Virus record (IMG/VR): IMGVR_UViG_3300027770_000025
Span: 1-64,000 of that record
Strand: one strand, 5' to 3'
Length of the DNA: 64,000 nt
Shown: piece after piece, positions 1 through 46,419 of the stretch
How positions within the stretch are numbered: the first letter of the stretch is position 1
Layout: each line of letters starts with the position of its first letter
The notes under the pieces: model-generated
The model's input: the letters and a program-made list of their open reading frames with translations, nothing else
The model's database searches: none
Told to the model about the DNA's origin: nothing
Program-made: the position numbers and the translations under genes

Positions 1-3000
1 TAGTTCCTGCTGATCCTGAAGTACCTGATGTACCACTAGTTCCTGAGGTTCCTGAAGTTCCGCTAGTTCCTGCTGATCCTGAAGTTCCACTAGTTCCTGC
101 TGATCCTGAGGTACCCGATGTACCACTGGTTCCTGATGTACCACTAGTTCCTGCTGATCCTGAAGTTCCGCTAGTTCCTGCTGATCCTGAAGTTCCGCTA
201 GTTCCTGCTGATCCTGAAGTACCCGATGTACCACTAGTTCCTGATGTACCACTAGTTCCTGCTGATCCTGAAGTACCTGATGTACCACTAGTTCCTGAGG
301 TTCCTGAAGTTCCACTAGTTCCTGAGGTTCCTGAAGTTCCGCTAGTTCCTGCTGATCCTGAAGTTCCGCTAGTTCCTGCTGATCCTGAAGTACCCGATGT
401 ACCACTAGTTCCTGAAGTTCCACTAGTTCCTGCTGATCCTGAAGTTCCACTAGTTCCTGCTGATCCTGAAGTTCCACTAGTTCCTGAAGTTCCACTAGTT
501 CCTGCTGATCCTGCTGATCCTGAAGTTCCTGCTGATCCTGAAGTACCACTAGTTCCTGAAGTACCCGATGTACCACTGGTTCCTGATGTACCACTAGTTC
601 CTGCTGATCCTGAAGTTCCACTAGTTCCTGAGGTTCCACTAGTTCCTGCTGATCCTGAAGTTCCTGAAGTTCCACTAGTTCCTGCTGATCCTGCTGATCC
701 TGAAGTACCTGATGTACCACTAGTTCCTGCTGATCCTGAAGTTCCGCTAGTTCCTGCTGATCCTGAGGTACCCGATGTACCACTAGTTCCCGAAGTTCCG
801 CTAGATCCGCTAGATCCTGTTTTTCCACTAGATCCTGCTGATCCTGCTGATCCTGAAGTTCCACTAGTTCCTGCTGATCCTGAGGTACCCGATGTACCAC
901 TAGTTCCTGAAGTTCCACTAGTTCCTGCTGATCCTGAAGTACCACTAGTTCCTGAAGTTCCACTAGATCCAGCAGCTCCATCAGACATCCAACTAACTGA
1001 ATAGGTTTCTGTTCCTCCCCACTGTCCATTCCCAACTACAAAAGTAAGAGGTATTGTCCAAAAGTTATTGAGGACGGTATAGAACAAGTTTCCAACTGTA
1101 AATATACCAAAAACACTAGTATCATTAACCTGCGTTATTTGTAAACGAGAAGGTTTACCCGCGGCTTGATTAGCATCTAAAGCATTAAACCAACCAGTAT
1201 ACGCTCCAGTTAAAGAAGAATCTGAAATATCTATTGATGTGGTATCGGCAAAATTAGCGTTGTCGCCAATGATAATACCGGAGCCCATCTCCGGTGGGTT
1301 ATTAGTCTCCCACCTTCCTGAGTTTGCACCATCAATTCCTGGATCCCCTTGAGATCCTTGAGCTCCCGATGTACCACTTGAACCGCTAGACCCCGATGTT
1401 CCTGAAGAACCGCTTGAACCTGAAGTTCCTGAAGAACCGCTAGTACCACTAGTTCCTGCTGATCCTGAAGTACCACTAGTTCCTGAAGTACCACTAGTTC
1501 CTGAAGTTCCACTAGTTCCACTAGTTCCTGCTGATCCTGATGTACCTGATGTACCACTAGTTCCTGAAGTTCCGCTAGTTCCTGCTGATCCTGAAGTACC
1601 ACTAGTTCCTGCTGATCCTGAAGTACCTGATGTACCACTAGTTCCTGAAGTTCCACTAGTTCCTGCTGATCCTGAAGTACCTGATGTACCACTAGTTCCT
1701 GAAGTTCCACTAGTTCCTGAAGTACCTGAAGTTCCACTAGTTCCTGAAGTTCCACTAGTACCTGCTGATCCCGAAGTACCTGAAGTTCCTGCTGATCCTG
1801 AAGTACCACTAGTTCCTGAAGTACCACTAGTTCCTGAAGTTCCACTAGTTCCACTAGTTCCTGCTGATCCTGATGTACCTGCTGATCCTGATGTACCTGA
1901 AGTTCCACTAGTTCCTGAAGTTCCTGCTGATCCTGAAGTACCTGCTGATCCTGAAGTACCTGCTGATCCTGAAGTACCACTAGTTCCTGAAGTACCTGAT
2001 GTACCACTAGTTCCTGCTGATCCTGAAGTTCCACTAGTTCCTGAAGTACCTGCTGATCCCGAAGTACCTGAAGTTCCTGCTGATCCTGAAGTACCACTAG
2101 TTCCTGAAGTACCACTAGTTCCTGAAGTTCCACTAGTTCCACTAGTTCCTGCTGATCCTGATGTACCTGCTGATCCTGATGTACCTGAAGTTCCACTAGT
2201 TCCTGAAGTTCCTGCTGATCCTGAAGTACCTGCTGATCCTGAAGTACCTGATGTACCACTAGTTCCTGAAGTTCCACTAGTTCCTGAAGTACCTGAAGTT
2301 CCACTAGTTCCTGCTGATCCTGAAGTACCTGCTGATCCTGAAGTACCACTAGTTCCTGAAGTACCTGAAGTACCACTAGTTCCTGCTGATCCTGAAGTAC
2401 CTGATGTACCACTAGTTCCTGAAGTTCCACTAGTTCCTGCTGATCCTGAAGTACCTGAAGTTCCTGCTGATCCTGAAGTACCACTAGTTCCTGAAGTACC
2501 ACTAGTTCCTGATGACCCATTAACCCCTGATGTTCCCGCTGATCCGGAATTTCCAGATGTACCACTAGATCCTGCAGTTCCATCTAGTCCGGCTATTCCT
2601 GAAGTACCTGCTGATCCTGAAGTACCACTAGTTCCTGAAGTTCCTGCTGATCCTGATGTACCACTAGTTCCTGATGATCCTGAAGTACCACTAGTTCCTG
2701 CTGATCCTGAAGTACCTGAGGTACCTGCTGATCCTGAAGTTCCTGATGTTCCTGCTGATCCTGAAGTTCCGCTAGTTCCTGATGTTCCTGCTGATCCTGA
2801 TGTACCGCTAGATCCGCTAGATCCTGTTTTTCCACTAGATCCTGCTGATCCTGCTGATCCTGAAGTTCCGCTAGTTCCTGCTGATCCTGAAGTACCCGAT
2901 GTACCACTAGTTCCTGAGGTTCCACTAGTTCCTGCTGATCCTGAAGTACCTGATGTACCACTAGTTCCTGAGGTTCCTGAAGTTCCGCTAGTTCCTGCTG

Positions 3001-6000
3001 ATCCTGAAGTTCCACTAGTTCCTGCTGATCCTGAGGTACCCGATGTACCACTAGTTCCTGAAGTTCCACTAGTTCCTGCTGATCCTGAAGTTCCTGATGT
3101 ACCACTAGTTCCTGAAGTTCCACTAGTTCCTGCTGATCCTGAAGTTCCGCTAGTTCCTGCTGATCCTGAAGTACCTGATGTACCACTAGTTCCTGAAGTT
3201 CCACTAGTTCCTGCTGATCCTGAAGTTCCGCTAGTTCCTGCTGATCCTGAAGTACCTGATGTACCACTAGTTCCTGAGGTTCCTGAAGTTCCGCTAGTTC
3301 CTGCTGATCCTGAAGTTCCACTAGTTCCTGCTGATCCTGAAGTACCTGATGTACCACTAGTTCCTGAGGTTCCACTAGTTCCTGCTGATCCTGAAGTTCC
3401 GCTAGTTCCTGCTGATCCTGAAGTACCTGATGTACCACTAGTTCCTGAGGTTCCACTAGTTCCTGCTGATCCTGAAGTTCCGCTAGTTCCTGCTGATCCT
3501 GAAGTACCACTAGTTCCTGCTGATCCTGAAGTACCTGATGTACCACTAGTTCCTGAAGTTCCACTAGTTCCTGAAGTTCCTGCTGATCCTGAAGTACCTG
3601 ATGTTCCACTAGTTCCTGATGATCCATTAACTCCTGAAGTTCCTGCTGATCCTGAAGTTCCTGCTGATCCTGAAGTTCCTGAAGTTCCTGAAGTTCCACT
3701 AGTTCCTGCTGATCCTGAGGTACCTGCTGATCCTGAGGTACCACTAGTTCCTGAAGTACCTGCTGATCCTGAGGTACCACTAGTTCCTGAAGTACCTGCT
3801 GATCCTGAGGTACCACTAGTTCCTGAGGTTCCACTAGTTCCTGATGATCCGTTAACTCCTGAAGTACCTGCTGATCCTGAAGTACCTGATGTACCACTAG
3901 TTCCTGAAGTTCCACTAGTTCCTGCTGATCCTGAAGTTCCTGAAGTTCCTGAAGTTCCTGCTGATCCTGAGGTACCACTAGTTCCTGCTGATCCTGAAGT
4001 TCCACTAGTTCCTGCTGATCCTGAAGTTCCACTAGTTCCTGATGATCCCGAAGTACCTGATGTACCACTAGTTCCTGAAGTTCCACTAGTTCCTGCTGAT
4101 CCTGAAGTTCCTGAAGTTCCTGAAGTTCCTGAAGTTCCTGAAGTTCCACTAGTTCCTGAAGTTCCACTAGTTCCTGATGATCCCGAAGTACCACTAGTTC
4201 CTGAAGTTCCACTAGTTCCTGAAGTACCTGCTGATCCTGAAGTTCCACTAGTTCCTGAGGTTCCACTAGTTCCTGATGATCCGTTAACTCCTGAAGTTCC
4301 TGCTGATCCTGAAGTTCCCGAAGAACCATTTGCTCCCGATGTTCCTGCTGATCCTGAAGTTCCTGAAGAACCACTTGCTCCTGATGTTCCTGCTGATCCT
4401 GAAGTTCCAGAAGAACCATCTGCTCCTGATGTTCCAGAAGAACCATCTGCTCCTGAAGTTCCAGAAGATCCACTTGCTCCTGAAGTTCCCGAAGAACCAT
4501 TTGCTCCCGATGTTCCTGCTGATCCTGAAGTTCCTGAAGAACCACTTGCTCCTGATGTTCCTGCTGATCCTGAAGTTCCAGAAGAACCATTTTCTCCTGA
4601 TGTTCCAGAAGATCCACTTACTCCTGATGTTCCAGAAGATCCACTTGCTCCTGAAGTTCCCGAAGAACCATTTGCTCCCGATGTTCCTGCTGATCCTGAA
4701 GTTCCTGAAGAACCACTTGCTCCTGATGTTCCTGCTGATCCTGAAGTTCCAGAAGAACCATTTTCTCCTGATGTTCCAGAAGATCCACTTGCTCCTGAAG
4801 TTCCCGAAGAACCATTTGCTCCCGATGTTCCTGCTGATCCTGAAGTTCCTGAAGAACCACTTACTCCTGATGTTCCTGCTGATCCTGAAGTTCCAGAAGA
4901 ACCATTTTCTCCTGATGTTCCAGAAGATCCACTTGCTCCTGATGTTCCAGAAGATCCACTTGCTCCTGAAGTTCCCGAAGAACCATTTGCTCCCGATGTT
5001 CCTGCTGATCCTGAAGTTCCTGAAGAACCACTTGCTCCTGATGTTCCTGCTGATCCTGAAGTTCCAGAAGAACCATTTTCTCCTGATGTTCCAGAAGATC
5101 CACTTGCTCCTGATGTTCCTGCTGATCCTGATGTTCCAGAAGATCCACTTGCTCCTGAAGTTCCCGAAGAACCACTTGCTCCTGATGTTCCCGAAGAACC
5201 ACTTGCTCCTGAAGTTCCTGCTGATCCTGATGTTCCCGAAGAACCATCTGCTCCTGATGTTCCCGAAGAACCGTTTTCTCCTGATGTTCCTGCTGATCCT
5301 GAAGTTCCTGAAGAACCACTTGCTCCTGATGTTCCTGCTGATCCTGAAGTTCCAGAAGAACCATCTGCTCCTGATGTTCCAGAAGAACCATCTGCTCCTG
5401 ATGTTCCCGAAGAACCATCTGCTCCTGAAGTTCCAGAAGATCCTGCTGCTCCTGATGTTCCTGCTGATCCTGATGTTCCAGAAGAACCATCTGCTCCTGA
5501 AGTTCCAGAAGAACCACTTGCTCCTGATGTTCCAGAAGATCCGTTTGCTCCTGATGTTCCAGAAGATCCATCTGCTCCTGAAGTTCCAGAAGATCCACTT
5601 GCTCCTGAAGTTCCCGAAGAACCATTTGCTCCCGATGTTCCTGCTGATCCTGAAGTTCCTGAAGAACCACTTGCTCCTGATGTTCCTGCTGATCCTGAAG
5701 TTCCAGAAGAACCATTTTCTCCTGATGTTCCAGAAGATCCACTTGCTCCTGATGTTCCTGCTGATCCTGATGTTCCAGAAGATCCACTTGCTCCTGATGT
5801 TCCCGAAGAACCACTTGCTCCTGAAGTTCCCGAAGAACCACTTGCTCCTGAAGTTCCTGCTGATCCTGATGTTCCCGAAGAACCATTTGCTCCTGAAGTT
5901 CCCGAAGAACCGTTTGCTCCTGAAGTTCCAGAAGAACCACTTGCTCCTGAAGTTCCCGAAGAACCACTTGCTCCTGAAGTTCCCGAAGAACCACTTGCTC

Positions 6001-6868
6001 CTGATGTTCCTGCTGATCCTGAAGTTCCAGAAGAACCATCTGCTCCTGATGTTCCCGAAGAACCATCTGCTCCTGAAGTTCCAGAAGATCCTGCTGCTCC
6101 TGAAGTTCCAGAAGTTCCAGAAGATCCTGCTGATCCTGATGTTCCTGCTGATCCTGATGTTCCAGAAGAACCATCTGCTCCTGATGTTCCCGAAGAACCA
6201 TCTGCTCCTGAAGTTCCAGAAGATCCTGCTGCTCCTGAAGTTCCAGAAGATCCTGCTGCTCCTGATGTTCCTGCTGATCCTGATGTTCCAGAAGAACCAC
6301 TTGCTCCTGAAGTTCCAGAAGATCCACTTGCTCCTGATGTTCCAGAAGATCCACTTGCTCCTGATGTTCCAGAAGATCCACTTGCCCCTGAAGTTCCCGA
6401 AGAACCACTTGCTCCTGATGTTCCCGAAGAACCACTTGCTCCTGAAGTTCCTGCTGATCCTGATGTTCCCGAAGAACCGTTTGCTCCTGATGTTCCCGAA
6501 GAACCGTTTGCTCCTGATGTTCCCGAAGAACCACTTGCTCCTGATGTTCCCGAGGAACCTGCTGCTCCTGATGTTCCCGAGGAACCTGCTGCTCCTGATG
6601 TTCCCGAGGAACCTGCTGCTCCTGATGTTCCCGAAGAACCACTTGCTCCTGAAGTTCCTGCTGATCCTGATGTTCCCGAAGAACCATTTGCTCCTGAAGT
6701 TCCCGAAGAACCGTTTGCTCCTGATGTTCCCGAAGAACCTGCTGCTCCTGATGTTCCCGAAGAACCTGCTGCTCCTGATGTTCCCGAGGAACCTGCTGCT
6801 CCTGATGTTCCCGAAGAACCACTTGCTCCTGAAATACCACTAGTTCCACTGCTTCCACTTCCCGTTCC
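1..6868 (-). repeat. 9-nt period coding repeat (e.g. GGAACTAGT, GGATCAGCA, GGAACTTCA) interrupted at ~980-1330
   Basis: Directly visible tandem 9-mers. Unit composition switches near 4320, from GAS/GAN/GEN/GAD+GSS to GTS/GSA. Confidence 0.95.
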
Positions 6869-7798
6869 TCCTGATATAGTTATTGTGGTATATCCGCTAG
6901 AATCAGTTACAGACGAAACGCCAGATCCAGTAAAGTTTAGACCAGTAACACCTACTCCTATCTGGGATCCACTAGAATAAGTATTTATAGCAGATCCTGA
7001 TCCCCCTGATCCACCAGGTATTGTAACCGTTACCGTATTGTATTGATCCCCAGTTTCAGTTACTGTAACACCAGCACCGGTAAATCCGACATACCAAGCT
7101 CCGTTGAAATGCTGTCCCGTTTGTCCAATGATTACTGGAACATAATCAGAAATTGCAAGTACGTCTATATTATAAGCAGCCTCTGCTATACCAGCTGGTA
7201 GATCCGGATATACATCATTCGAAACAGCATTTTGATATGTCCTATAATCAGATTGCTGAGATATTGCACTATAAGTAGCATTAGTAGGTACTCTATTAAG
7301 AGAACTGTATGCACCATCCTCATCATAAGTACAGAAGAAATTAATGTATTGATAAGATGGTTTATCGGTTATTTTGTTAATTACAAAGGTATTAAATACC
7401 CCCGAAATAGGATTAAATGATCCAGCATCTGTTGCTATGTTTGTAACTAAAAAACCCTCCAATAAATCAGCAGTTGTATAAATGCCGTTTACCTCAAGAT
7501 AAGTTCCTTCACAATAAAATACGCCGTCACCACACGATGTGGTAATGGTAACACCAGTATTAGTTGCTGTTCCATTGGCGGACATTACGAATGAAGAAGC
7601 ACCGTAATTAACAGAAATTACGGTAGTTGATGAGGGAATTCCTGTACCTGTTACAGCAAGACCTGGTATAATGAGATTAATATTAGATACGCTAGTAACT
7701 ACATTACTTCCGTTTGATACGTTTCCTGTTATCTGTGGTCCGTTGGTAAAAAATTCAGGTATAAATAATTGACCGGTTATTCTAGGTTGACTCCCCAT
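1..7798 (-). CDS. Giant Gly-X-Y (Ser/Thr-rich) repeat fibre protein, >=2599 aa, 3' end outside window
   Basis: ATG at 7798 (MGSQPRITGQLFIPEFF...). The frame was spot-checked at 7798, ~2580, ~1370 and position 4 and stays in phase. ~310-aa unique N-terminus, then GTS/GSA/GSS/GAS/GAN triplets, with a ~120-aa globular insert at ~980-1330. Absent from the ORF track because no stop lies in the window; the track's ELQ/QDQQ ORFs are its shadows. Confidence 0.9.
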   Translation of the reverse strand, partial: MGSQPRITGQLFIPEFFTNGPQITGNVSNGSNVVTSVSNINLIIPGLAVTGTGIPSSTTVISVNYGASSFVMSANGTATNTGVTITTSCGDGVFYCEGTYLEVNGIYTTADLLEGFLVTNIATDAGSFNPISGVFNTFVINKITDKPSYQYINFFCTYDEDGAYSSLNRVPTNATYSAISQQSDYRTYQNAVSNDVYPDLPAGIAEAAYNIDVLAISDYVPVIIGQTGQHFNGAWYVGFTGAGVTVTETGDQYNTVTVTIPGGSGGSGSAINTYSSGSQIGVGVTGLNFTGSGVSSVTDSSGYTTITISGGTGSGSSGTSGISGASGSSGTSGAAGSSGTSGAAGSSGTSGAAGSSGTSGANGSSGTSGANGSSGTSGSAGTSGASGSSGTSGAAGSSGTSGAAGSSGTSGAAGSSGTSGASGSSGTSGANGSSGTSGANGSSGTSGSAGTSGASGSSGTSGASGSSGTSGASGSSGTSGASGSSGTSGASGSSGTSGASGSSGTSGSAGTSGAAGSSGTSGAAGSSGTSGADGSSGTSGADGSSGTSGSAGTSGSAGSSGTSGTSGAAGSSGTSGADGSSGTSGADGSSGTSGSAGTSGASGSSGTSGASGSSGTSGASGSSGTSGANGSSGTSGANGSSGTSGSAGTSGASGSSGTSGASGSSGTSGASGSSGTSGSAGTSGASGSSGTSGENGSSGTSGSAGTSGASGSSGTSGSAGTSGANGSSGTSGASGSSGTSGADGSSGTSGANGSSGTSGASGSSGTSGADGSSGTSGSAGTSGAAGSSGTSGADGSSGTSGADGSSGTSGADGSSGTSGSAGTSGASGSSGTSGSAGTSGENGSSGTSGADGSSGTSGSAGTSGASGSSGTSGASGSSGTSGASGSSGTSGSAGTSGASGSSGTSGENGSSGTSGSAGTSGASGSSGTSGSAGTSGANGSSGTSGASGSSGTSGASGSSGTSGENGSSGTSGSAGTSGVSGSSGTSGSAGTSGANGSSGTSGASGSSGTSGENGSSGTSGSAGTSGASGSSGTSGSAGTSGANGSSGTSGASGSSGTSGVSGSSGTSGENGSSGTSGSAGTSGASGSSGTSGSAGTSGANGSSGTSGASGSSGTSGADGSSGTSGADGSSGTSGSAGTSGASGSSGTSGSAGTSGANGSSGTSGSAGTSGVNGSSGTSGTSGTSGTSGSAGTSGTSGTSGTSGTSGSSGTSGTSGTSGTSGTSGTSGTSGTSGSAGTSGTSGTSGTSGTSGSSGTSGTSGSAGTSGTSGSAGTSGTSGSAGTSGTSGTSGSAGTSGTSGTSGTSGTSGSAGTSGVNGSSGTSGTSGTSGTSGSAGTSGTSGTSGSAGTSGTSGTSGSAGTSGSAGTSGTSGTSGTSGSAGTSGSAGTSGVNGSSGTSGTSGTSGSAGTSGTSGTSGTSGTSGTSGSAGTSGTSGSAGTSGTSGSAGTSGTSGTSGTSGTSGSAGTSGTSGSAGTSGTSGTSGTSGTSGSAGTSGTSGSAGTSGTSGTSGTSGTSGTSGSAGTSGTSGSAGTSGTSGTSGTSGTSGSAGTSGTSGSAGTSGTSGTSGTSGTSGSAGTSGTSGTSGTSGTSGSAGTSGTSGSAGTSGTSGTSGTSGTSGTSGSAGTSGTSGTSGTSGTSGSAGTSGTSGSAGSAGSSGKTGSSGSSGTSGSAGTSGTSGTSGSAGTSGTSGSAGTSGTSGSAGTSGTSGSSGTSGTSGSAGTSGTSGTSGSAGTSGIAGLDGTAGSSGTSGNSGSAGTSGVNGSSGTSGTSGTSGTSGSAGTSGTSGSAGTSGTSGTSGTSGTSGSAGTSGTSGTSGTSGTSGSAGTSGSAGTSGTSGTSGTSGTSGTSGTSGTSGSAGTSGSAGTSGTSGTSGTSGSAGTSGSAGTSGTSGTSGTSGTSGTSGTSGSAGTSGTSGSAGTSGTSGTSGSAGTSGTSGTSGTSGTSGSAGTSGSAGTSGSAGTSGTSGTSGTSGSAGTSGSAGTSGTSGTSGTSGTSGTSGTSGSAGTSGTSGSAGTSGTSGTSGTSGTSGTSGTSGTSGTSGTSGSAGTSGTSGTSGTSGTSGSAGTSGTSGSAGTSGTSGTSGTSGTSGSAGTSGTSGTSGTSGTSGTSGTSGSAGTSGTSGSSGTSGSSGSSGTSGSSGSSGTSGAQGSQGDPGIDGANSGRWETNNPPEMGSGIIIGDNANFADTTSIDISDSSLTGAYTGWFNALDANQAAGKPSRLQITQVNDTSVFGIFTVGNLFYTVLNNFWTIPLTFVVGNGQWGGTETYSVSWMSDGAAGSSGTSGTSGTSGSAGTSGTSGTSGTSGTSGSAGTSGTSGSAGSAGSSGKTGSSGSSGTSGTSGTSGTSGSAGTSGTSGSAGTSGTSGTSGSAGSAGTSGTSGTSGSAGTSGTSGTSGTSGSAGTSGTSGTSGTSGTSGTSGTSGSAGTSGSAGSAGTSGTSGTSGTSGSAGTSGTSGSAGTSGTSGTSGTSGTSGSAGTSGTSGSAGTSGTSGTSGTSGTSGTSGTSGTSGTSGSAGTSGTSGTSGTSGTSGSAGTSGTSGSAGTSGTSGSAGTSGTSGTSGTSGTSGSAGTSGTSGSAGTSGTSGTSGTSGTSGTSGSAGT

Positions 7799-7810
7799 GT
7801 TTCTTTTATT

Positions 7811-10180
7811 TTAAAATTGCGCTCTTATATTTCTATCACCTGTTGAAAGAGCAGCCCAAACAAATACATTAGGCGTAGAAGTAAGTGTCATTGTTGCATT
7901 TATAGTTGCCCCTGCTGTTGTATAAACTCTCCAAACGGGAGCATATGAATTATAGATTGCATCATTCTGTCCTGCCCCGTTTGCTGATGATTGCGGTGTT
8001 GTTAGTGTGTATGTACTATTCATGGAGTCAGAAATAAGCATGCTCATGAGTTGAACATCACCACCAGAAGGGGCTACTATAGTTGAACCTGTTGCAGTAA
8101 CTGAAGAAGATGTAAATCCTAAGGAGTAAGCTGCTGAAGATCCTGAGGATGATCCGCTGTTCGCGGTAGCTACTGAGAATGAGTTTGCATCTATATAGGT
8201 AATGGTACCATTAAAGTTATCAGCATTTGCATTTCTTACTATGATCATATCTCCATTACTTCTTCCGTGAGAGGTGTGGGTAATCGTTAATGTTGTTGTT
8301 GATCTAGTCCACGAAAGTCCAGTATAAACTGTTGAACTAGATTCCATCCATATTTGCGCGTTTCCTGAAAGATATGTTCTGTACCTGGAAACCGTATTAT
8401 ATATGGTAGAGGATCCTCCAGATGCGTTTGATCCAGTAGGACCGGTAGGACCAGTTATACTAACTCCCGAAGTTCCTGATGATCCCGAGGCTCCCTGTAC
8501 TCCGAAATTTCCCGTTATTGAAAAACTCCATGACGCATAGGTATTACCCGCATTGCTGGCTGAAGTAACATTTATCGTTAAAGATGTTCCTGAGAATGCG
8601 GTGATGTCGCCTTCCATAAAGTTGTCGGCTACTGCAAAGGCTCTAACTCTCTCACCTACTTGGAATGCAGTTTGTGTATTTGATAAGTTTGTTGTCCATG
8701 TTTTACTTCCTGATCCTACTATAATATTAGAAGTAGTTGAAGTTAATCCATAATATCCTATACCTTGTGCTCCTGAAGTTCCTGCTGATCCTGAAGAACC
8801 TGAAGTTCCGCTAGTTCCTGATGTACCACTAGATCCTGAAGTTCCGCTAGTTCCTGATGAACCGTTAGAGCCTGATGTTCCACTAGATCCATTAACTCCT
8901 GATGTTCCACTAGATCCAGAAATTCCAGTGTAACCCTGAAGATTAACATTCCATACGCTGTAAGGATTTCCTGAGCCTATTTCATAACTACATAAAATAG
9001 TCATAGATCCCGTACCTGAATTATATGCTGTTACTAATCCAACAAATAATCCTACGGAGTTATTATAAACAGACACCGTTTCACCACCGGTAGAATTATA
9101 AGAAAGTCCAGTCCCAACAGTGATAGTTACACTATTTCCTACGGTTGGTATTGTCGTTGTGCTAACACTGGTTGTTTGATATAAACTTGCTCCATTAACC
9201 CCCGATGTTCCACTAGATCCGGAAGATCCTGATGAGCCAGAAGATCCTGATGTTCCTGAAGTCCCGGAAGATCCTGATGATCCTGATGATCCCGATGATC
9301 CCGAAGTTCCGCTAGTTCCAGATGATCCATTAGAACCCGATGTTCCTGATGAGCCACTAGAACCTGATGTTCCTGATGAACCGCTAGATCCAGATCTTCC
9401 TGATGATCCTGATGATCCTGATGATCCCGAGGTTCCGCTAGTTCCAGATGATCCATTAGAACCCGATGTTCCTGATGAACCGTTAGAACCGGATGTTCCT
9501 GATGACCCATCAATACCAGATGTTCCTGATGAACCGCTAGATCCAGAGCTTCCTGCTGATCCTGAAGTTCCTGCTGATCCTGAAGTTCCACTAGTTCCAG
9601 AGGAACCATCAACACCAGATGTTCCCGACGAACCGCTAGATCCAGAGGTTCCTGATGATCCTGAGGTACCACTAGTTCCTGAAGTTCCTGATGTTCCAGC
9701 TGATCCTGAAGATCCTGAAGATCCTGAAGATCCGCTAGTTCCTGAAGATCCATCAACACCGGATGTTCCTGATGAACCACTAGACCCAGAGCTTCCTGAA
9801 GTTCCACTAGTTCCTGCTGATCCTGAAGTTCCGCTAGTTCCTGCTGATCCTGAAGTTCCGCTAGTTCCTGCAGACCCTGAAGATCCACTAGATCCTGATG
9901 ACCCTGAGGTTCCACTAGTTCCTGAAGATCCTGAAGAGCCATCAAAACCACTAGTTCCTGAAGATCCATATGCCGGACCTTGAGGTCCTTGTGGACCCAC
10001 AGGTCCAGATGGACCGGTTACCCCTTCTATATAAGGTAGATCGTTCCATGGTTTTTGGCCATCCCCAATTTTTAATCTTCCTGTGTCTGATTCAACCCCA
10101 GGCTCTCCGAGCATCAAAACCGGATCATTATAAGACCAGTTTATCGAAAAGTCCCTTCTTAATAATATTCTGTATGGCAT
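7811..10180 (-). CDS. Fibre protein: Mtd_N/hyaluronidase-type N-terminal domain, G-S-S/G-T-S repeat, two tandem beta modules, C-terminal domain
   Basis: N-terminus RILLRRD..W...DPVL..GEPG.ESDTGRLKIGDG...W..LPY; ~270 aa of Gly-X-Y; two related ~85-aa modules ending YSVWNVNLQG and YASWSFSITG. Confidence 0.8.
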   Translation of the reverse strand: MPYRILLRRDFSINWSYNDPVLMLGEPGVESDTGRLKIGDGQKPWNDLPYIEGVTGPSGPVGPQGPQGPAYGSSGTSGFDGSSGSSGTSGTSGSSGSSGSSGSAGTSGTSGSAGTSGTSGSAGTSGTSGSSGSSGSSGTSGVDGSSGTSGSSGSSGSSGSAGTSGTSGTSGTSGSSGTSGSSGSSGTSGVDGSSGTSGTSGSAGTSGSAGSSGSSGSSGTSGIDGSSGTSGSNGSSGTSGSNGSSGTSGTSGSSGSSGSSGRSGSSGSSGTSGSSGSSGTSGSNGSSGTSGTSGSSGSSGSSGSSGTSGTSGSSGSSGSSGSSGTSGVNGASLYQTTSVSTTTIPTVGNSVTITVGTGLSYNSTGGETVSVYNNSVGLFVGLVTAYNSGTGSMTILCSYEIGSGNPYSVWNVNLQGYTGISGSSGTSGVNGSSGTSGSNGSSGTSGTSGSSGTSGTSGTSGSSGSAGTSGAQGIGYYGLTSTTSNIIVGSGSKTWTTNLSNTQTAFQVGERVRAFAVADNFMEGDITAFSGTSLTINVTSASNAGNTYASWSFSITGNFGVQGASGSSGTSGVSITGPTGPTGSNASGGSSTIYNTVSRYRTYLSGNAQIWMESSSTVYTGLSWTRSTTTLTITHTSHGRSNGDMIIVRNANADNFNGTITYIDANSFSVATANSGSSSGSSAAYSLGFTSSSVTATGSTIVAPSGGDVQLMSMLISDSMNSTYTLTTPQSSANGAGQNDAIYNSYAPVWRVYTTAGATINATMTLTSTPNVFVWAALSTGDRNIRAQF

Positions 10181-10264: not shown

Positions 10265-10292
10265 AAAAAAAGACCCGGTGTTACGGGTCTTT
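10265..10292 (-). terminator. Rho-independent terminator
   Basis: AAAGACCCG/CGGGTCTTT stem with U-tract on minus, just downstream of the 10313 gene. Confidence 0.75.
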
Positions 10293-10312: not shown

Positions 10313-10825
10313 TCAGGTTAATCTTATTCTAACTGCACCGCTATTGTGATATATCCCACCTAAAGGAATACCCCCCGTTGCTGCATATGTGTCATTAGGA
10401 AAATTATATAATGCATAATTAGTTAATATAAGTGTACCCGTAGTTCCTGTTATAGTTTGACTACCGTAAAAAGTATTAGCACCAGTTCCGCCCGCTCCTG
10501 TAGGACCAGCATTTCCAGTAGAACCCGTACCTCCTGCTATTGTTATGTTCACGAATCCATTGGCCCCTGTAATACCAGAGACGCTAGATCCGGTAAAATT
10601 AAATCCGGTAACACCCGTTAATATCTCTAATCCGTTTCTATAAACTGAAGCGTTAACAACATCATAGGGATTCCAATATGAAAGATTGTTCCAATATGTA
10701 GTTCCATCTCCTATTTTCATAAGAGAGGTATTTGTCTCGTAGCCGAATTCACCCACTAAAAGTATGGGATTATTTACCCCCCATATTGTTGAGGTGTCTC
10801 TTCTTATTTGTATTCTAAAAGCCAT
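10313..10825 (-). CDS. Short Mtd_N-domain fibre/virion protein
   Basis: RIQIRRD...W...NPILLVGEFGYETNT..MKIGDG...W..LSY; shares the GVTGFNFTG module with the giant protein. Confidence 0.75.
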   Translation of the reverse strand: MAFRIQIRRDTSTIWGVNNPILLVGEFGYETNTSLMKIGDGTTYWNNLSYWNPYDVVNASVYRNGLEILTGVTGFNFTGSSVSGITGANGFVNITIAGGTGSTGNAGPTGAGGTGANTFYGSQTITGTTGTLILTNYALYNFPNDTYAATGGIPLGGIYHNSGAVRIRLT

Positions 10826-11214: not shown

Positions 11215-11964
11215 TTAAAGTATTTCCCTATCTCCGTTAGGAGTAACGTTTTTGGCAAAGAGCTGTTCCATTCTAATTCCGGTTTGCATTAGATTACCCC
11301 TGAACTTTTCTGTGGTTAAATCTTTCTCAGGGAAATACGTTTCTGCAGCAACTGTGAATTTAAAATCTATGTATTGTGGATTATTCTGATAACTGAATTC
11401 TAGTTGTTTAGTCATATCATAGCTTTCAGGAAATCCGACTTGGGCAGGAATTCTAAACCCTTCGTATTCAAAACTGAATTGGTATGTTTTATAGAAAGTT
11501 GTTACTACTGATTGGAATATCTTAAAAGCATCGAGAAGGGTGTCAACTTTTATTGTGATATCAAAAGTTATATTTAGCGGTACTGAATTAGTAAAGGAAG
11601 AAAGTGTCTTCATTTCTCCTTTAAGATCCTCCTGCGCGTATGACATCCGGGTGTATTTATTAGATAATCCTTGAACATCTATCTGAAGAGACTGTAACGA
11701 AACTACTCCCCTTGGGATAACGTCATAGTTACCCTCCGCAACAACCTCGTCAGTTTTACAGTTTGTGTACTTTATAAAGAAATCTTGAAGAAATGACTCA
11801 TCGCCAGTTAGCGAATAGAAAAAAGGAATATAAGTCTCTAATACCTCCTGCTGATCATTTATCTGAATGTACTTCAGTTTATCGTTCATTGACTTAAGTA
11901 GGGAAGTTATTAGTCCTCTTAAGAAAACATCGTCCGTGTTGTATTTTTCTAAAAATCCTGACAT
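11215..11964 (-). CDS. T4 gp15-like tail completion/sheath stabiliser
   Basis: VPLNITFDITIKVDTLLDAFKIFQSVVTTFY resembles the gp15 core; size and context fit. Confidence 0.6.
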   Translation of the reverse strand: MSGFLEKYNTDDVFLRGLITSLLKSMNDKLKYIQINDQQEVLETYIPFFYSLTGDESFLQDFFIKYTNCKTDEVVAEGNYDVIPRGVVSLQSLQIDVQGLSNKYTRMSYAQEDLKGEMKTLSSFTNSVPLNITFDITIKVDTLLDAFKIFQSVVTTFYKTYQFSFEYEGFRIPAQVGFPESYDMTKQLEFSYQNNPQYIDFKFTVAAETYFPEKDLTTEKFRGNLMQTGIRMEQLFAKNVTPNGDREIL

Positions 11965-12916: not shown

Positions 12917-14581
12917 TTAAAATTTATCTATTTTAATACTAGAGAAGTTATGCGTCTTAGTAACATCTAATTTCCAGTCAAATATCTCATGTGGCATGGG
13001 CGCGTGATTTATGACAAATATATTAAGCCCCATTGATCTTGAATTTTTCTGTAAAATTTTAAGTATCGCTTGCACGCCCTCGGGATCGACCGAACTAAAT
13101 AGCTCATCAAGAAAAAGCAGGTTGATTGTGCTAAATTTAAGCTTCATCAGCTTCATTATCGATATAAGAACCACGAAATCAACTTTCTTCATTTCCCCGG
13201 TACTTAAAGACGGTACAGGTATTTCCACACCCATATGATATAATGAAGCTTTAAACTCATCATCAAAAACTACTTGATATTCAAGATTCATTTCTCTTAG
13301 CAAATCTAATATCTCAGAATTAAGGGAGGGTAGAATTGTTTTTATCGCCATCTGTTTAACCCCCTTCTCGCTTAGCACGTCATCTAAGCCTTTAATCCAT
13401 AGGTTCTTCTCCTGTGTCTTAGCCACATCAGATCCTATTTTTATCTTATCCTCTTCTAAATTGGTTATTATTCTTTTAAGAGACTCTACCTGTTTATCAT
13501 TGTCCGAAGATTCAAGTCTTTGTATTTCAAATAATACCTCTCTAATTTTACTATCAATTTTAACACCCTTCTCCTGGAGGTCCATTTTTTTTGTCTTCAT
13601 CTGAGATTCCTTTTCTCTAACTTCAGTTAAAGATGTTTCGCACCCAGTGAATTCTGTATAGCTATCATCTTTCTCGTTTGTCAGATTACCCTTTAAATCA
13701 TTATGAAAATCGCTATCTAAAGGTCCTTCGCAGGTTGGACATTTTTCAGATTGATATAATCTAAGTCTTCTTTCAAGATCCTGGTATTTAGTTCTCGCTT
13801 CGATTAGTGATCTATTTGTATTAGTTACTAAATCGTTTATTTCCTGCTCTTGAATTTTAAATTCTGTTATTTTAGCAGAATGTATTTTTTGAATATTCTT
13901 AAATTTATCTAAACTTTCATTTAGAGTTCCTAGCTCGTCTTTCACCTCTTGCTCGATGATAGCTAAAAGAGAATCCATCTCTTCCTGTGATTTATCTATG
14001 CTATTTTCTGTCGATTGAAATTTACCGGATAGGATGTCTAGGGATTCCTTTATTCTTCTAACCTCACTCTTTAGGACTTCCCTCATTTGATTTAATATAT
14101 GAAATCCGAATATTTTATCAACAATAGCCCTTTTGTCCTGTGGACTCATTTTAATAAAAGATTTAAAGTCGTTTATAGAAAGAGATATGGTGTTGTTGAA
14201 AACATAAAAAGGAATACCTATTAAATCATCAGCTAAATAGTCCTGAACGTTTTTAGTCCCTGCCTGGTCATATTTAACACCGTCAATATAGAGAAAGAAA
14301 AATGTGGGTTCTAAACCTCTTTCGACGGTTATATTTTTACCATTCGATTCAAATTCTATGCGCGTCCATGCATTACCGTTAATTCTATTTGGTATATCCC
14401 CGAGTTTCTTGCCCTCAACTTTACCATAAAGACAAAAAGATATAACTTGTGATATACTAGTTTTACCTGCCCCGTTTTCACCAACAACCTGAAACAAACA
14501 AGAGGATTCAGGAAAATCTAAAACTTGTTTCTTATTCCCGTAAGAGGAAAAGTTTTTCCATTCTATTTTTCTGATTCTCAT
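12917..14581 (-). CDS. Recombination endonuclease ATPase subunit (gp46/SbcC/Rad50)
   Basis: Walker A GENGAGKTS, CPTC zinc hook, LSTGE signature, LFLDE, coiled coil. Confidence 0.95.
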   Translation of the reverse strand: MRIRKIEWKNFSSYGNKKQVLDFPESSCLFQVVGENGAGKTSISQVISFCLYGKVEGKKLGDIPNRINGNAWTRIEFESNGKNITVERGLEPTFFFLYIDGVKYDQAGTKNVQDYLADDLIGIPFYVFNNTISLSINDFKSFIKMSPQDKRAIVDKIFGFHILNQMREVLKSEVRRIKESLDILSGKFQSTENSIDKSQEEMDSLLAIIEQEVKDELGTLNESLDKFKNIQKIHSAKITEFKIQEQEINDLVTNTNRSLIEARTKYQDLERRLRLYQSEKCPTCEGPLDSDFHNDLKGNLTNEKDDSYTEFTGCETSLTEVREKESQMKTKKMDLQEKGVKIDSKIREVLFEIQRLESSDNDKQVESLKRIITNLEEDKIKIGSDVAKTQEKNLWIKGLDDVLSEKGVKQMAIKTILPSLNSEILDLLREMNLEYQVVFDDEFKASLYHMGVEIPVPSLSTGEMKKVDFVVLISIMKLMKLKFSTINLLFLDELFSSVDPEGVQAILKILQKNSRSMGLNIFVINHAPMPHEIFDWKLDVTKTHNFSSIKIDKF

Positions 14582-14582
14582 A

Positions 14583-15680
14583 CTATTTAGTTTCTTGCTC
14601 TTGTGTGGTTACTATTGTGTGTAATTTTACTAGACTCTGATACATCTTATCCTTTGTGTCTCTATCATGTTCTAAGTTTTCGACGTACTCCTTTATAAAA
14701 TCAAGAACATTGAATTGTCTGCCATCTATATCAATTATCTGCTGGGATAGAGAATTAGCTTGGTCTGGATCGTAAGGATGAAATTTAAGGCTTCTCTGTG
14801 ATTGTAAAATATCAGTTAAAATGTTAAGGGGTGCTTTTAAAGACATAACAGGATCAATCATTATGTCAACGAAGTTATTAGTAAATAACGGTTCTAAATC
14901 TTCATGTGTTGATTCCAGTATATCTGTGAAATAAAATCTTTTAAATTTTGGAGAAAAATCATTGGGAAAATAAGTCTCTTTTAGGTCAGAAACATTTAAA
15001 AGTGTTATGCCTTTCTGATTATCCATATCAGATCTGGTTATCTCATATGGTGATCCTAACATATTTATATTCCCTGCCTTTTGTGCATAGTGTATATGAC
15101 CAGAATAAACCTTTTTGAATTTATCGAATTCTTTGACAGAAGCACCAGTTTCTACCCGGGTGAATTTATTGAATTTTAAACCTCTTATATCTGCATGACA
15201 GCATAAAACATCATGCGGATCTGAATTTTCTAGAAATTCGCTTTCTGCTTCATGATCCTTTCTCCAAGGCATTAAAAGAAAAGATTTATCAAGTATCTTT
15301 AGTGTCTGGGGTTCTTCTACGATATTTATTCTGGGTATCCATTTGATAGATTTCAGCGAGTTTACGTCATTAGATGTTTTTCCCCACACGTCATGATTTC
15401 CTAGTATAATATAAACACCATCTTTAAAAATAACAGAAAGCTCTTCAGCTATTTCGATACCTAAGTTAAGTACTTTTAAATTTATGCTTTGTCTGGAGTC
15501 AAAAAAATCTCCAAGATGAAATAGAACATCACCAGGTTTATAATTTTCCCTAACTAGCGGAAAGAACCAATCGAAAAAATATTCTCTAATACTATCGATC
15601 CATTCATTAGAATTATTCCTTACCCCTAAATGGGTATCAGTTATAAACCAAATTCTTTTATCTGTTCCTATTGCTGTCAT
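14583..15680 (-). CDS. Recombination endonuclease nuclease subunit (gp47/SbcD/Mre11)
   Basis: DTHLG, GDFFD, GNHD and SGHIH metallophosphoesterase motifs; adjacent to gp46. Confidence 0.95.
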   Translation of the reverse strand: MTAIGTDKRIWFITDTHLGVRNNSNEWIDSIREYFFDWFFPLVRENYKPGDVLFHLGDFFDSRQSINLKVLNLGIEIAEELSVIFKDGVYIILGNHDVWGKTSNDVNSLKSIKWIPRINIVEEPQTLKILDKSFLLMPWRKDHEAESEFLENSDPHDVLCCHADIRGLKFNKFTRVETGASVKEFDKFKKVYSGHIHYAQKAGNINMLGSPYEITRSDMDNQKGITLLNVSDLKETYFPNDFSPKFKRFYFTDILESTHEDLEPLFTNNFVDIMIDPVMSLKAPLNILTDILQSQRSLKFHPYDPDQANSLSQQIIDIDGRQFNVLDFIKEYVENLEHDRDTKDKMYQSLVKLHTIVTTQEQETK

Positions 15681-46385: not shown

Positions 46386-46419
46386 ATTGTTATATGTTTT
46401 CTTTATCCCAAGTTATGAG

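What the first reader, a model, noticed from the sequence alone, without database searches (positions are those of the whole stretch)
1..7798. Hidden giant ORF: about 600 apparently uninterrupted, nearly proline-free Gly-X-Y triplets of Ser/Thr
Seen: the true frame encodes >=2599 aa. From ~6868 to ~1330 glycine appears to fall at every third residue (~1850 aa), with X/Y almost only Thr, Ser, Ala, Asn or Asp. The repeat resumes after a globular insert. Established: a collagen helix rises ~0.29 nm per residue, so this block alone would be roughly 0.5 micrometre, longer than typical tail fibres. Gly-X-X without Pro can alternatively form polyglycine-II bundles. Inference: an extremely long virion whisker or fibril, or a hydrated brush.
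Basis: partly seen in the sequence, partly recalled or inferred. Interest (0 to 1): 0.65.

Follow-up and report, generated by a model that had tools for sequence, protein, structure and literature searches.

The report
Giant proline-free collagen-like phage fibre
A 349-kb jumbo bacteriophage encodes a fibre protein of at least 2,988 amino acids whose shaft is about 800 Gly-X-Y triplets built almost only from Ser, Thr and Ala and which ends in a self-cleaving trimerisation chaperone; it is an extreme member of a widespread but uncharacterised class of phage collagen-like fibres.

Summary
Window 2..7798 (minus strand) is one open frame of 2,599 aa. It has 615 uninterrupted Gly-X-Y triplets (X = Thr/Ser/Ala, Y = Ser/Ala/Asn/Asp; 1 Pro, 1 Lys, 0 Arg in 1,845 aa), then a 114-aa globular insert, then more triplets.

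The window starts at base 1 of a 348,582-bp jumbo-phage contig. The contig's other end continues the same frame in phase for 388 aa and ends in a Peptidase_S74 chaperone domain. So the gene is at least 2,988 aa (798 triplets). The contig breaks inside it, as do the assemblies of all fetched relatives.

The N-terminal 314 aa are a conserved module. A 737-aa protein in a syntenic contig has the same ends with a short collagen tract.

The gene lies in the neck/tail module of a T4-like myovirus, next to a second GTS-collagen fibre and upstream of DUF6445 plus four glycosyltransferases. The collagen/oxygenase/GT4/GT9 linkage recurs in a distant relative whose 3,733-aa gene assembled almost identically three times.

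Verdict: a real, giant, trimeric collagen-type virion fibre, possibly O-glycosylated. It is a new variant of a known kind. The exact length, triple-helix formation, glycosylation and virion position are untested.

The parts
6857..7798 (-). N-terminal non-repeat region (aa 1-314), the presumed virion-attachment module. Residues ~10-180 are predicted as an all-beta fold, with a small beta-barrel at 19-90.
   Evidence: 146 relatives among 1.84 billion representatives. The best is P0002 (E 1.6e-62, 46% id over aa 6-288), a 737-aa protein with the same N-terminus, a short collagen tract and S74. AF2 model pLDDT >90 for 109 residues. Best structural match Z 8.9 to 8eci_2, then tail-tube and tailspike accessory domains. 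No Pfam or PHROG hit.
1322..6856 (-). Collagen-like block 1: 615 uninterrupted Gly-X-Y triplets (aa 315-2159), GTS/GSS/GSA type, 1 Pro, 1 Lys, 0 Arg.
   Evidence: Pfam Collagen E 2e-139 and 8e-121. The DNA repeat is degenerate (60-80% matches; periods 27/45/99/126/162/171/252 nt). Longest exact internal repeat 215 bp; 3.6% of 151-mers are non-unique.
980..1321 (-). 114-aa globular insert (aa 2160-2273): a beta-barrel with one helix, embedded in the collagen shaft.
   Evidence: AF2 with a 22-sequence alignment: mean pLDDT 91.1, pTM 0.84. 36 instances of the same module in about 25 collagen-like ORFs of other viral contigs. No Pfam family in any of 22 members. Best PDB match only Z 6.5.
1..979 (-). 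Collagen-like block 2, first part (aa 2274-2599; 109 triplets, GTS/GSA type). It runs off base 1 of the contig. It continues at genome 347,414-348,582 (GAQ-rich triplets, a ~65-aa tip, then Peptidase_S74 and the stop).
   Evidence: Pfam Collagen E 1.7e-48. The far-end piece scores Collagen E 4.1e-28 and Peptidase_S74 E 7.5e-15 (55.4 bits against a cut-off of 22).
7811..10180 (-). Upstream paralogous fibre gene, 789 aa: Mtd_N N-terminal domain, 87 + 20 GTS/GSS-type triplets, and globular inserts. It ends 12 nt before the giant gene's ATG, so the two are probably co-transcribed.
   Evidence: Pfam Mtd_N E 6.2e-10 and Collagen E 1.8e-46. PHROG tail-fibre families. Sequence.
10313..10825 (-). 170-aa Mtd_N protein that shares a ~45-aa segment with the end of the giant protein's N-terminal region.
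   Evidence: Pfam Mtd_N E 2.4e-10. 54% identity to aa 272-317 of the giant protein.
10269..10292 (-). Terminator-like hairpin (9-bp stem followed by a T run) between the 170-aa gene and the 789-aa gene. It is a possible upstream boundary of the fibre transcription unit.
   Evidence: a consensus scan only.
11215..11964 (-). T4 gp15-like tail sheath stabiliser, which marks the neck/tail structural module that holds the fibre genes.
   Evidence: Pfam T4-gp15_tss E 4.3e-06, 26.5 bits against a cut-off of 25.

Best explanation
The ORF is the structural gene of a very long homotrimeric virion fibre of a T4-like jumbo myovirus.

Shown: the domain order is N-terminal conserved module (314 aa), 615 Gly-X-Y triplets, a 114-aa beta-barrel knob, at least 183 more triplets, a ~65-aa tip, and a Peptidase_S74 intramolecular chaperone with an intact S-D-R-D-L-K motif. 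The gene straddles the two ends of the contig and is at least 2,988 aa long.

Inferred from what is established for S74 domains and for collagens: the C-terminal S74 domains trimerise and set the chain register. The triple helix then zips from the C- to the N-terminus, with the knob acting as a re-nucleation point or ligand-binding node. S74 then cleaves itself off at the Ser. The N-terminal module anchors the trimer to the particle, and the shaft (up to ~0.7 um if fully helical) extends the reach of the virion for first, reversible contact with the host or with particles.

Inferred from conserved gene neighbourhood: the Ser/Thr-only shaft lacks proline and charge pairs, so it is probably O-glycosylated by the glycosyltransferases encoded just downstream. 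The sugars would supply the stability or hydration that Pro/Hyp or salt bridges give in other collagens.

The position on the virion (neck or collar whisker versus baseplate fibre) is not resolved. Gene position between the gp15-like and neck-protein genes slightly favours the neck.
For: Open frame and composition. Pfam Collagen far above threshold. S74 at the C-terminus above threshold, with the motif aligned to the solved fibres 8jov and 6f45. All top PHROG hits are tail-fibre or baseplate-fibre families.

The two contig-end halves belong to one architecture. The phases are compatible. P0002 has the same N-terminal module (46% id) and S74 in one 737-aa protein, in a syntenic contig (Mtd_N fibre, P0002, GT1, 396-aa ORF, cut gene). 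In relatives the S74-ended collagen gene sits directly upstream of the same DUF6445/GT cluster.

Structural-module context: gp15-like, neck protein, TerL and sheath.

Glycosylation lead: DUF6445, GT2, GT2, GT1/4 and GT9 lie immediately downstream on the same strand. The same cluster is present in G005 and L131-L137. A distant relative (TerL 47% id) has giant collagen + collagen + 2OG-Fe(II) oxygenase + GT4-methyltransferase + methyltransferase + methyltransferase-GT9. Precedent: Thr glycosylation stabilises otherwise unfolded (Gly-Pro-Thr)10, and BclA is glycosylated (PMC11923368).

Sizes of this order are real: a 3,733/3,730/3,730-aa gene was recovered from three independent assemblies.

The gene is native: GC3 is 0.085 and codons are A/T-ending; the GC bump is a codon-position-2 effect.
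Against: There is no direct evidence of expression, virion incorporation, trimerisation, triple-helix formation or glycosylation.

The shaft lacks every stabiliser documented for prokaryotic collagens: Pro at X 19-31% (PMC8968730) and KGE/KGD salt bridges (PMC11923368). Here Thr sits at X, not Y.

The GT linkage is not general. Among 147 neighbours of GTS-collagen genes in 62 viral loci, only about 8 hits were glycosyltransferases and 14 were tail-fibre assembly chaperones. The 737-aa short-collagen protein still has GT1 nearby, so those enzymes may serve another substrate.

DUF6445 is a highly conserved, abundant gene of aquatic phage-like contigs, so its adjacency may be plain synteny.

At the direct contig-end join the Gly register slips by one residue. 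It is restored only if a 3-nt overlap is merged, so sequence is probably missing and the length is a lower bound.

The cultured relative with visible head fibres (PTm1) has no Gly-X-Y gene at the equivalent place.
Confidence: 0.7

Rival explanations
1. The protein is a virion appendage, but the Ser/Thr/Gly tract is not a collagen triple helix. It could be an intrinsically disordered, mucin-like (possibly glycosylated) tether or brush, or it could adopt another Gly-rich fold such as polyproline-II/polyglycine-II bundles. Only the S74-proximal part and the knob would be ordered trimers.
For: 1 Pro, 1 Lys and 0 Arg in 1,845 aa. The documented stabilisers of prokaryotic triple helices are absent. 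Unglycosylated (Gly-Pro-Thr)10 is a random coil (PMC11923368). The trimer prediction gave no support, though it also gave no evidence against.
Against: A perfect Gly period over 615 triplets with zero insertions or deletions points to strong selection on register. A disordered linker would not need this, and antiparallel PGII bundles would need regular turns, which are absent. The same strict periodicity is kept in unrelated phages, with runs of 424-810 triplets. A C-terminal trimerising chaperone is exactly what a C-to-N zipping triple helix needs.
Confidence: 0.2
2. The gene is real, but its length in this record is an assembly artefact: repeat units were duplicated, collapsed or mis-ordered by a short-read assembler. 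The 615-triplet run and the 2,988-aa total would then not be the true values.
For: The contig begins and ends inside this gene. The contigs of G005 and of five further relatives from other samples also end inside it. Exact internal repeats reach 215 bp, and 36% of 51-mers are non-unique. The Gly register slips at the direct join. G005, with 98% identical TerL, has a clearly different C-terminal collagen part.
Against: 96% of 151-mers are unique, and the tract is made of distinct, ordered sub-blocks with different higher-order periods. 7.8 kb plus 1.2 kb are free of stops and frameshifts, though unit lengths are multiples of 9 nt, so this is weak evidence. A larger gene of the same type came out as 3,733/3,730/3,730 aa in three independent assemblies. 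If anything the break implies missing sequence, so the true gene is more likely longer than shorter.
Confidence: 0.3
3. The downstream glycosyltransferases have nothing to do with the fibre. They would modify another substrate (host envelope polysaccharide, another virion protein or DNA), and the fibre would be unmodified.
For: GT neighbours are a minority among GTS-collagen genes in general. GT1 and a 396-aa ORF (in the position of this phage's GT9-like gene) remain next to the short 737-aa protein. Jumbo phages are reported to carry GT clusters attributed to polysaccharide modification (PMC7824862).
Against: The cluster lies inside the late structural module, on the same strand, between the fibre and neck genes. 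A differently composed GT/methyltransferase/oxygenase cluster lies next to the giant collagen genes in a relative with only 47% TerL identity. About 54% of shaft residues are Ser or Thr.
Confidence: 0.4

Closest known systems
Phage collagen-like tail-fibre proteins ('Bacteriophage collagen', Smith et al. 1998; cyanophage P-SSM2 orf28, PMC1079782)
   Same: Gly-X-Y tracts, often rich in Ser/Thr, inside phage fibre candidates, and a presumed trimeric shaft. Pfam Collagen and PHROG tail-fibre hits.
   Different: The scale: 798 triplets or more, 615 of them uninterrupted, against a median of 163 total in 119 viral loci with the same motif. Pro and charged pairs are essentially absent. There is an embedded beta-barrel knob and an adjacent glycosyltransferase cluster.
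Fibres and tailspikes with a C-terminal intramolecular chaperone (Peptidase_S74: K1F endosialidase; S16 gp37, PDB 6f45; GP4 fibre, PDB 8jov)
   Same: The C-terminal S74 domain scores above the Pfam threshold and the Ser-x4-Lys motif aligns to solved members. The function expected from the family is trimerisation followed by self-cleavage.
   Different: In the characterised members the chaperone folds triple beta-helix or beta-prism stalks. Here it would nucleate a collagen-type shaft some 2,400 residues long. Cleavage was not tested.
BclA-type glycosylated collagen-like filaments of Bacillus/Clostridioides exosporium
   Same: Surface filaments with Thr-rich Gly-X-Y repeats. O-glycosylation is carried out by dedicated glycosyltransferases encoded nearby, and tract length is highly variable between strains (PMC11923368, PMC7157674).
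   Different: BclA repeats are mostly GPT (Pro at X, Thr at Y) and are far shorter. I know from the literature, not from a test here, that BclA ends in a C1q-like domain; no such domain was found in this protein. This protein ends in S74, and Thr sits at X.
T4 fibritin (wac) neck whiskers
   Same: A trimeric fibre whose gene lies beside the neck genes, with folding nucleated from the C-terminus (T4 gene order is from my own knowledge). Here the fibre genes lie between the gp15-like and neck-protein genes.
   Different: Fibritin is a ~50-nm coiled coil with a foldon. It shares no sequence or domain similarity with this protein, and no neck location has been shown for this one.
Giant GTS-type collagen genes of other huge phages (G001-G003, 3,730-3,733 aa; LR756501, 735 kb, 2,816 aa)
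   Same: The same Pro-free Ser/Thr Gly-X-Y composition, the same embedded beta-barrel module, tandem fibre paralogues, and in G001 a neighbouring oxygenase/GT cluster.
   Different: The N- and C-terminal domains differ (no anchor-module match in G001-G005; no S74 at the G001 C-terminus). These genes are unannotated sequences, and I found no description of them in the literature.

Membership tests
Collagen triple-helix repeat proteins (Pfam PF01391) | Gly at every third residue over long uninterrupted stretches, with an HMM score above the gathering threshold | tested here: met
   615 + 109 + 29 + 28 + 17 triplets. Pfam scores 453.9, 394.3 and 162.7 bits against a cut-off of 27.2.
Collagen triple-helix repeat proteins (Pfam PF01391) | Sequence features known to stabilise the helix: Pro/Hyp at X/Y, or Lys-Gly-Asp/Glu salt-bridge triplets | tested here: not met
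   1 Pro, 1 Lys, 0 Arg, 15 Asp and 6 Glu in 1,845 aa. Bacterial norms are 19-31% Pro at X (PMC8968730).
Collagen triple-helix repeat proteins (Pfam PF01391) | Actual formation of a right-handed homotrimeric triple helix | not testable with these tools
   The trimer prediction of aa 2105-2330 x3 gave no verdict. This needs CD, EM or a crystal structure.
Peptidase_S74 (intramolecular chaperone) fibre/tailspike proteins | A C-terminal S74 domain above the Pfam threshold | tested here: met
   PF13884 E 7.5e-15, 55.4 bits against 22, at residues 294-353 of the 388-aa far-end piece. phrog_8215 and phrog_5668 C-terminal matches.
Peptidase_S74 (intramolecular chaperone) fibre/tailspike proteins | The catalytic Ser and Lys (Ser-x4-Lys) at the start of the domain | tested here: met
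   S-D-R-D-L-K aligns to S-D-E-R-L-K of 8jov_1 and S-D-R-R-I-K of 6f45_A.
Peptidase_S74 (intramolecular chaperone) fibre/tailspike proteins | The domain is part of the same polypeptide as the fibre shaft | tested here: inconclusive
   The phases of the two contig ends are compatible, P0002 has both ends in one protein, and relatives show the same layout. However, the join itself is unverified and the Gly register slips there.
Peptidase_S74 (intramolecular chaperone) fibre/tailspike proteins | Autoproteolytic release after trimer folding | not testable with these tools
   Needs expression and a Ser-to-Ala mutant.
BclA-like glycosylated collagen filaments | Dedicated glycosyltransferase genes adjacent to the collagen-like gene | tested here: met
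   GT2, GT2, GT1/4 and GT9 directly downstream. The arrangement is conserved in G005 and L131-L137, and in another form in G001.
BclA-like glycosylated collagen filaments | GPT-type repeats (Pro at X, Thr at Y) and a C-terminal C1q/TNF-like trimerisation domain | tested here: not met
   Thr is at X, Ser at Y, and there is no Pro. The C-terminus is S74.
BclA-like glycosylated collagen filaments | O-glycans on the repeat | not testable with these tools
   Needs glycoproteomics.
T4 fibritin-type neck whiskers | Coiled-coil shaft with a C-terminal foldon, attached to the neck | tested here: not met
   No coiled coil and no fibritin family hit in Pfam or PHROGs. Only the gene position near the neck genes is similar.

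The most novel reading that the evidence does not exclude
A virus-encoded 'glyco-collagen': a triple helix about 0.7 um long, free of proline and charge pairs, whose stability comes only from dense O-glycosylation of Ser/Thr. The sugars would be installed by the phage's own glycosyltransferase (and oxygenase/methyltransferase) cluster, and folding would be nucleated by a self-cleaving S74 chaperone. This would be a distinct solution to triple-helix stability, and the longest appendage known on a phage particle, used as a capture line in dilute water.
Probability: 0.2. Interest if true: 0.75.

Novelty: new variant of a known kind. Interest (0 to 1): 0.45.

Why it matters
Collagen-like shafts in phage fibres are known, and very long prokaryotic collagen-like chains are on record, so the kind is not new.

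Three things stand out. The first is the combination in one protein: hundreds of perfectly periodic triplets with no proline and no charge pairs, a self-cleaving trimerisation chaperone, and a conserved neighbouring glycosylation cluster. The second is that such genes recur, undescribed, across huge phages, including the 735-kb record. If the shaft really is a triple helix, it tests current ideas of what holds triple helices together, and it offers a simple, repetitive, possibly glycan-dependent scaffold for biomaterials work. If it is on the virion, it would be several capsid diameters long and would bear on how jumbo phages find hosts.

The third point is practical. This gene is where short-read assemblies of this phage lineage break, so 'linear' genomes of this group may simply be circular assemblies cut at the fibre gene.

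Tried and rejected
I did not try another route and did not use read laying, so there is no depth, long-read or expression test.
- Trimer prediction (aa 2105-2330 x3): no verdict. It counts neither for nor against.
- The contig-end join. The unique 30-mer at the far end matched nothing else in viral contigs and only the source contig in metagenome contigs. G005 (TerL 98% id) cannot resolve it because its C-terminal collagen part is different. The ends overlap by only 3 nt.
- The N-terminal region: no Pfam or PHROG hit, no tblastn hit in cultured phages, no relative in IMG/VR by word patterns, and none in G001-G005. Foldseek against PDB found nothing below E 1e-3, BFVD gave only weak fibre/virion hits, and VIA placed only the 19-90 beta-barrel. 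The attachment site stays open.
- The insert: the Atlas look-alikes were unnamed viral clusters (one search was a size slip). There is no Pfam hit, and Foldseek and VIA gave no convincing fold match.
- DUF6445 versus the G001 2OG-Fe(II) oxygenase: no BLAST similarity and no PDB sequence relative. The oxygenase reading rests only on an H-x-D...H...R pattern seen.
- PTm1 (head-fibre phage): no Gly-X-Y gene between its neck and terminase genes, so homology to those appendages is rejected.
- T4 late-promoter motif TATAAATA: none directly upstream of the fibre genes. Sigma-70-like hits were at or below chance.
- Phage tRNAs matching the gene's dominant codons: none.
- Foreign origin as the cause of the GC bump: rejected (GC3 0.085).
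Full report
**1. What is in the sequence**

The window is the first 64 kb of a 348,582-bp virus record. It is classed linear, with a CheckV completeness estimate of 100%. On the minus strand, 2..7798 is a single open frame of 2,599 aa that starts at an ATG and has no stop before the window edge.

Residues 315-2159 (window 1322-6856) are 615 consecutive Gly-X-Y triplets without a single interruption:
- X is Thr 342, Ser 184, Ala 70.
- Y is Ser 472, Ala 101, Asn 24, Asp 14.
- The commonest triplets are GTS (341), GSS (94) and GSA (89).
- The block holds 1 Pro, 1 Lys, 0 Arg, 15 Asp and 6 Glu.

A 114-aa non-repeat insert follows (aa 2160-2273, window 980-1321), then 109 more triplets up to base 2. 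Both GTS blocks match Pfam Collagen far above threshold (E 2e-139 and 8e-121). The other long ORFs over this stretch on either strand are shadows of a stop-free repeat.

**2. The gene continues at the other end of the contig**

Base 1 of the window is base 1 of the contig. Read on the minus strand, the last 1,169 bases of the contig are also a Gly-X-Y frame. Its phase fits: one base is left over at the window start and two at the contig end. Abutting the ends gives an ORF of 2,988 aa with its stop at genome 347,414. The far-end piece holds GAQ-rich triplets (29 + 28 + 17), a tip of about 65 aa and a Peptidase_S74 domain (E 7.5e-15, 55.4 bits against a cut-off of 22).

At the direct join the Gly register slips by one residue (…GSAGT-T-SGKTG…). 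The ends share only the 3 nt CTA, and merging that overlap would restore a perfect register. I read this as a circular or circularly permuted genome whose assembly broke inside the repeat, with an unknown amount missing. On that reading 2,988 aa and 798 triplets are lower bounds.

Three results support the two halves being one gene:
- P0002 (737 aa) carries the same N-terminal region (46% identity) and an S74 end in one protein.
- P0002 lies in a syntenic contig.
- In relatives, the S74-ended collagen gene sits directly upstream of the same downstream cluster.

I could not verify the join itself. The unique 30-mer at the far end occurs in no other viral contig and, among metagenome contigs, only in the source contig.

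**3. Is the length an artefact?**

The DNA repeat is degenerate (60-80% matches) and is organised in distinct sub-blocks with periods of 27 to 252 nt. The longest exact internal repeat is 215 bp. Only 3.6% of 151-mers are non-unique, against 36% of 51-mers. Most of the tract can therefore be resolved with paired 150-nt reads, but a few nodes are ambiguous.

Against confidence in the exact length:
- This contig, the near-identical phage G005 (TerL 98% identical) and five further relatives from other samples all have contigs that end inside this gene.
- G005's C-terminal collagen part differs clearly from this one (GTS-type where this phage has GAQ), so the tract is hypervariable or unstable in assembly.

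In favour of such sizes being real: a still larger gene of the same type came out as 3,733, 3,730 and 3,730 aa in three independent metagenome assemblies of a ~270-kb relative. The versions differ by one triplet and a few dozen substitutions.

The gene is native. GC3 is 0.085, against 0.285 in neighbouring genes. The local GC rise to ~47% is a codon-position-2 effect of Gly, Ser, Thr and Ala codons.

**4. What kind of phage and what neighbourhood**

On the minus strand the gene order runs:
- gp15-like sheath stabiliser (11215-11964)
- a 170-aa Mtd_N protein
- a terminator-like hairpin
- a 789-aa Mtd_N + collagen fibre of the same GTS type (87 + 20 triplets)
- after a 12-nt gap, the giant gene
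- across the contig ends: DUF6445, GT2, GT2, GT1/4, a GT9-like protein, an 829-aa protein with a borderline T4 neck-protein match (24.9 bits, just under the Pfam cut-off of 25), a 259-aa ORF, the T4-type large terminase and the tail sheath.

Upstream in the window lie Rad50/Mre11-like and DnaB-like genes.

The terminase is most similar to those of huge metagenomic phages (39%), Sphingomonas phage PAU and Tenacibaculum phages PTm1/PTm5 (34%), and the Lak phages (32%). PAU and PTm1 are noted for a mop of flexible fibres and for head fibres (PMC7824862, PMC13282480). However, PTm1 has no Gly-X-Y gene between its neck and terminase genes, so that link is only an analogy.

**5. The non-repeat parts**

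*N-terminal region.* It has no Pfam or PHROG match. It does have 146 relatives among 1.84 billion representative proteins, and it is modular. With a 14-sequence alignment, residues ~10-180 fold confidently as an all-beta structure. Residues 19-90 are a small beta-barrel like the accessory domains of phage tail tubes, tail tips and tailspikes (best Z 8.9). Foldseek found nothing convincing in PDB, and only weak fibre or virion hits among predicted viral structures. This fits an attachment or adaptor module but does not say where on the particle it binds.

*The insert.* It is a recurring module. A local iterative search found 36 instances in about 25 collagen-like ORFs of unrelated viral contigs, including the G001 giant gene and the 735-kb phage LR756501. 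It folds with mean pLDDT 91 as a beta-barrel with one helix. It matches no Pfam family and has no convincing solved relative (best Z 6.5).

*The S74 domain.* It keeps the Ser-x4-Lys motif (S-D-R-D-L-K), which aligns to the solved fibres 8jov and 6f45.

**6. How common is this kind of gene**

In those loci the best Gly-X-Y frame has a median of 163 triplets. Several are giant and essentially proline-free: 1,015 triplets (longest run 639) in G001, 810 uninterrupted in L095, and others of 550-720. The 735-kb record LR756501 has three tandem collagen-like genes of 1,664, 2,372 and 2,816 aa, the last with 778 triplets. With 798 triplets and a run of 615, this gene ranks about third in that sample.

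In ordinary-sized contigs the usual neighbours are tail-fibre assembly chaperones (Phage_tail_APC, 14 of 147 neighbours). Glycosyltransferases and oxygenases are a minority, and they come mostly from the jumbo relatives.

In the papers I could search, phage Gly-X-Y fibres are long known (PMC1079782, citing Smith et al. 1998). Prokaryotic collagen-like chains of up to ~2,000 triplets are recorded, and Thr-rich triplets are noted as over-represented in bacteria and viruses (PMC11923368). I found no description of this Pro-free, charge-free GTS class or of its giant members in huge phages.

**7. How it most likely works**

*Shown:* the architecture, the family memberships of the collagen and S74 parts, the structural-module context and the conserved neighbourhood.

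*Inferred from established knowledge of S74 chaperones and of collagen folding (C-terminal nucleation, zipper-like propagation; PMC11923368):*
- Three chains are brought into register by the C-terminal S74 domains.
- The helix propagates toward the N-terminus through block 2, the knob and block 1.
- S74 then removes itself.
- The N-terminal module fixes the trimer to the particle.

If fully helical, block 1 is 528 nm and block 2 about 157 nm, which is several capsid diameters.

*Inferred from neighbourhood:* the shaft lacks both known stabilisers of prokaryotic triple helices, namely Pro at X and Lys-Gly-Asp/Glu clamps. Thr glycosylation is a documented alternative: (Gly-Pro-Thr)10 folds only when galactosylated, and BclA is glycosylated. 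Four glycosyltransferases follow the gene. A differently built GT4/GT9/methyltransferase/2OG-oxygenase cluster follows the giant collagen genes of a relative with only 47% TerL identity. I therefore favour an O-glycosylated shaft, at roughly even odds.

DUF6445 has an H-x-D…H…R pattern like 2OG-Fe(II) oxygenases. It is also a very conserved and abundant gene of aquatic phage-like contigs, so its role here is open. As for function, I commit to first, reversible, long-range contact with the host or with particles. Location on the virion is unresolved, though gene position slightly favours the neck.

**8. Rivals**

- (a) The tract is not a triple helix but a disordered, mucin-like tether or another Gly-rich fold. 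The composition allows this. The perfect register over 615 triplets, kept in unrelated phages, argues against it.
- (b) The assembled length is wrong. This is a real risk for the exact number, and the error is more likely in the direction of missing sequence.
- (c) The glycosyltransferases act on something else. This is supported by their presence next to the short 737-aa protein and by their rarity next to GTS-collagen genes in general.

**9. Verdict**

The interpretation as a very long virion fibril is partly supported. The kind of protein, a phage collagen-like fibre with an S74 chaperone, is known. The combination of extreme length, a proline- and charge-free Ser/Thr shaft, an embedded unnamed beta-barrel module and a conserved glycosylation cluster makes this a new variant of that kind. 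It is one of a recurrent but undescribed set in jumbo and huge phages. Interest is moderate (0.45). Its value lies mainly in the biophysical question it poses and in the practical point that this gene is where assemblies of this lineage break.

Noticed in passing
window 46419-46493 (-): ARAGORN calls a tRNA-like gene with an undetermined, 2-nt 'anticodon' (tt). It lies between tRNA-Cys and tRNA-Arg in a small tRNA cluster. The whole genome has only 7 tRNA genes, and none is for Gly, Ser, Thr or Ala.
   Followed up: no
window 1-7798, both strands (e.g. 4330-6843 +, 837 aa; 2593-4617 -, 674 aa; 4861-6858 -, 665 aa): Long ORFs in other frames and on the opposite strand overlap the repeat. They are shadow frames of a stop-free, codon-biased repeat and could be mis-called as genes.
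   Followed up: partly
window 980-1321 (-), plus L058, L131-L134, L116, L128, L130 and other loci: The 114-aa insert belongs to an unnamed beta-barrel domain family that recurs (36 instances) inside collagen-like fibre ORFs of many unrelated viral contigs. Some ORFs carry three copies. It has no Pfam family and no convincing solved relative.
   Followed up: yes
L003:13677-14255 (-) = genome 346,677-347,255; G001 L127:18434-19024 (+): DUF6445, just downstream of the fibre gene, shows an H-x-D...H...R pattern like 2OG-Fe(II) oxygenases. In G001 a bona fide 2OG-FeII_Oxy_3 ORF sits beside collagen genes that contain no proline, so any substrate is unclear. DUF6445 homologues are very abundant and 65-90% identical in aquatic metagenomes.
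   Followed up: partly
L129 (G005:C1:157001-172849), L131-L135: Every fetched assembly of this phage lineage (own record, G005 and five contigs from other samples) ends inside this fibre gene. G005 (TerL 98% identical) has a GTS-type C-terminal collagen part where this phage has GAQ-type, plus an extra 397-aa ORF before DUF6445. Other relatives have 411-aa or Laminin_G_3 genes there.
   Followed up: yes
L130 (LR756501.1 84599-127559): The unannotated 735-kb huge-phage record carries three tandem collagen-like fibre genes of 1,664, 2,372 and 2,816 aa. The last has 778 triplets, with a longest run of 424.
   Followed up: partly
genome 246,009-249,412 (-), outside the window: Three short Gly-X-Y tracts of 11 triplets each, spaced about 1.6 kb apart. 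They may mark a further set of small collagen-containing structural genes.
   Followed up: no
window 12917-15680 (-): An adjacent Rad50/SbcC-like ATPase (554 aa) and Mre11-type phosphoesterase (365 aa), the T4 gp46/gp47 pair, followed by a DnaB-like helicase at 16200-17501.
   Followed up: no
window 1-10000 versus the rest: GC is 44-48% over the fibre genes against ~33% elsewhere. This comes entirely from codon position 2 (GC2 0.89). GC3 is only 0.085, and synonymous choice is extremely skewed to GGA, TCA, ACT and GCA.
   Followed up: yes
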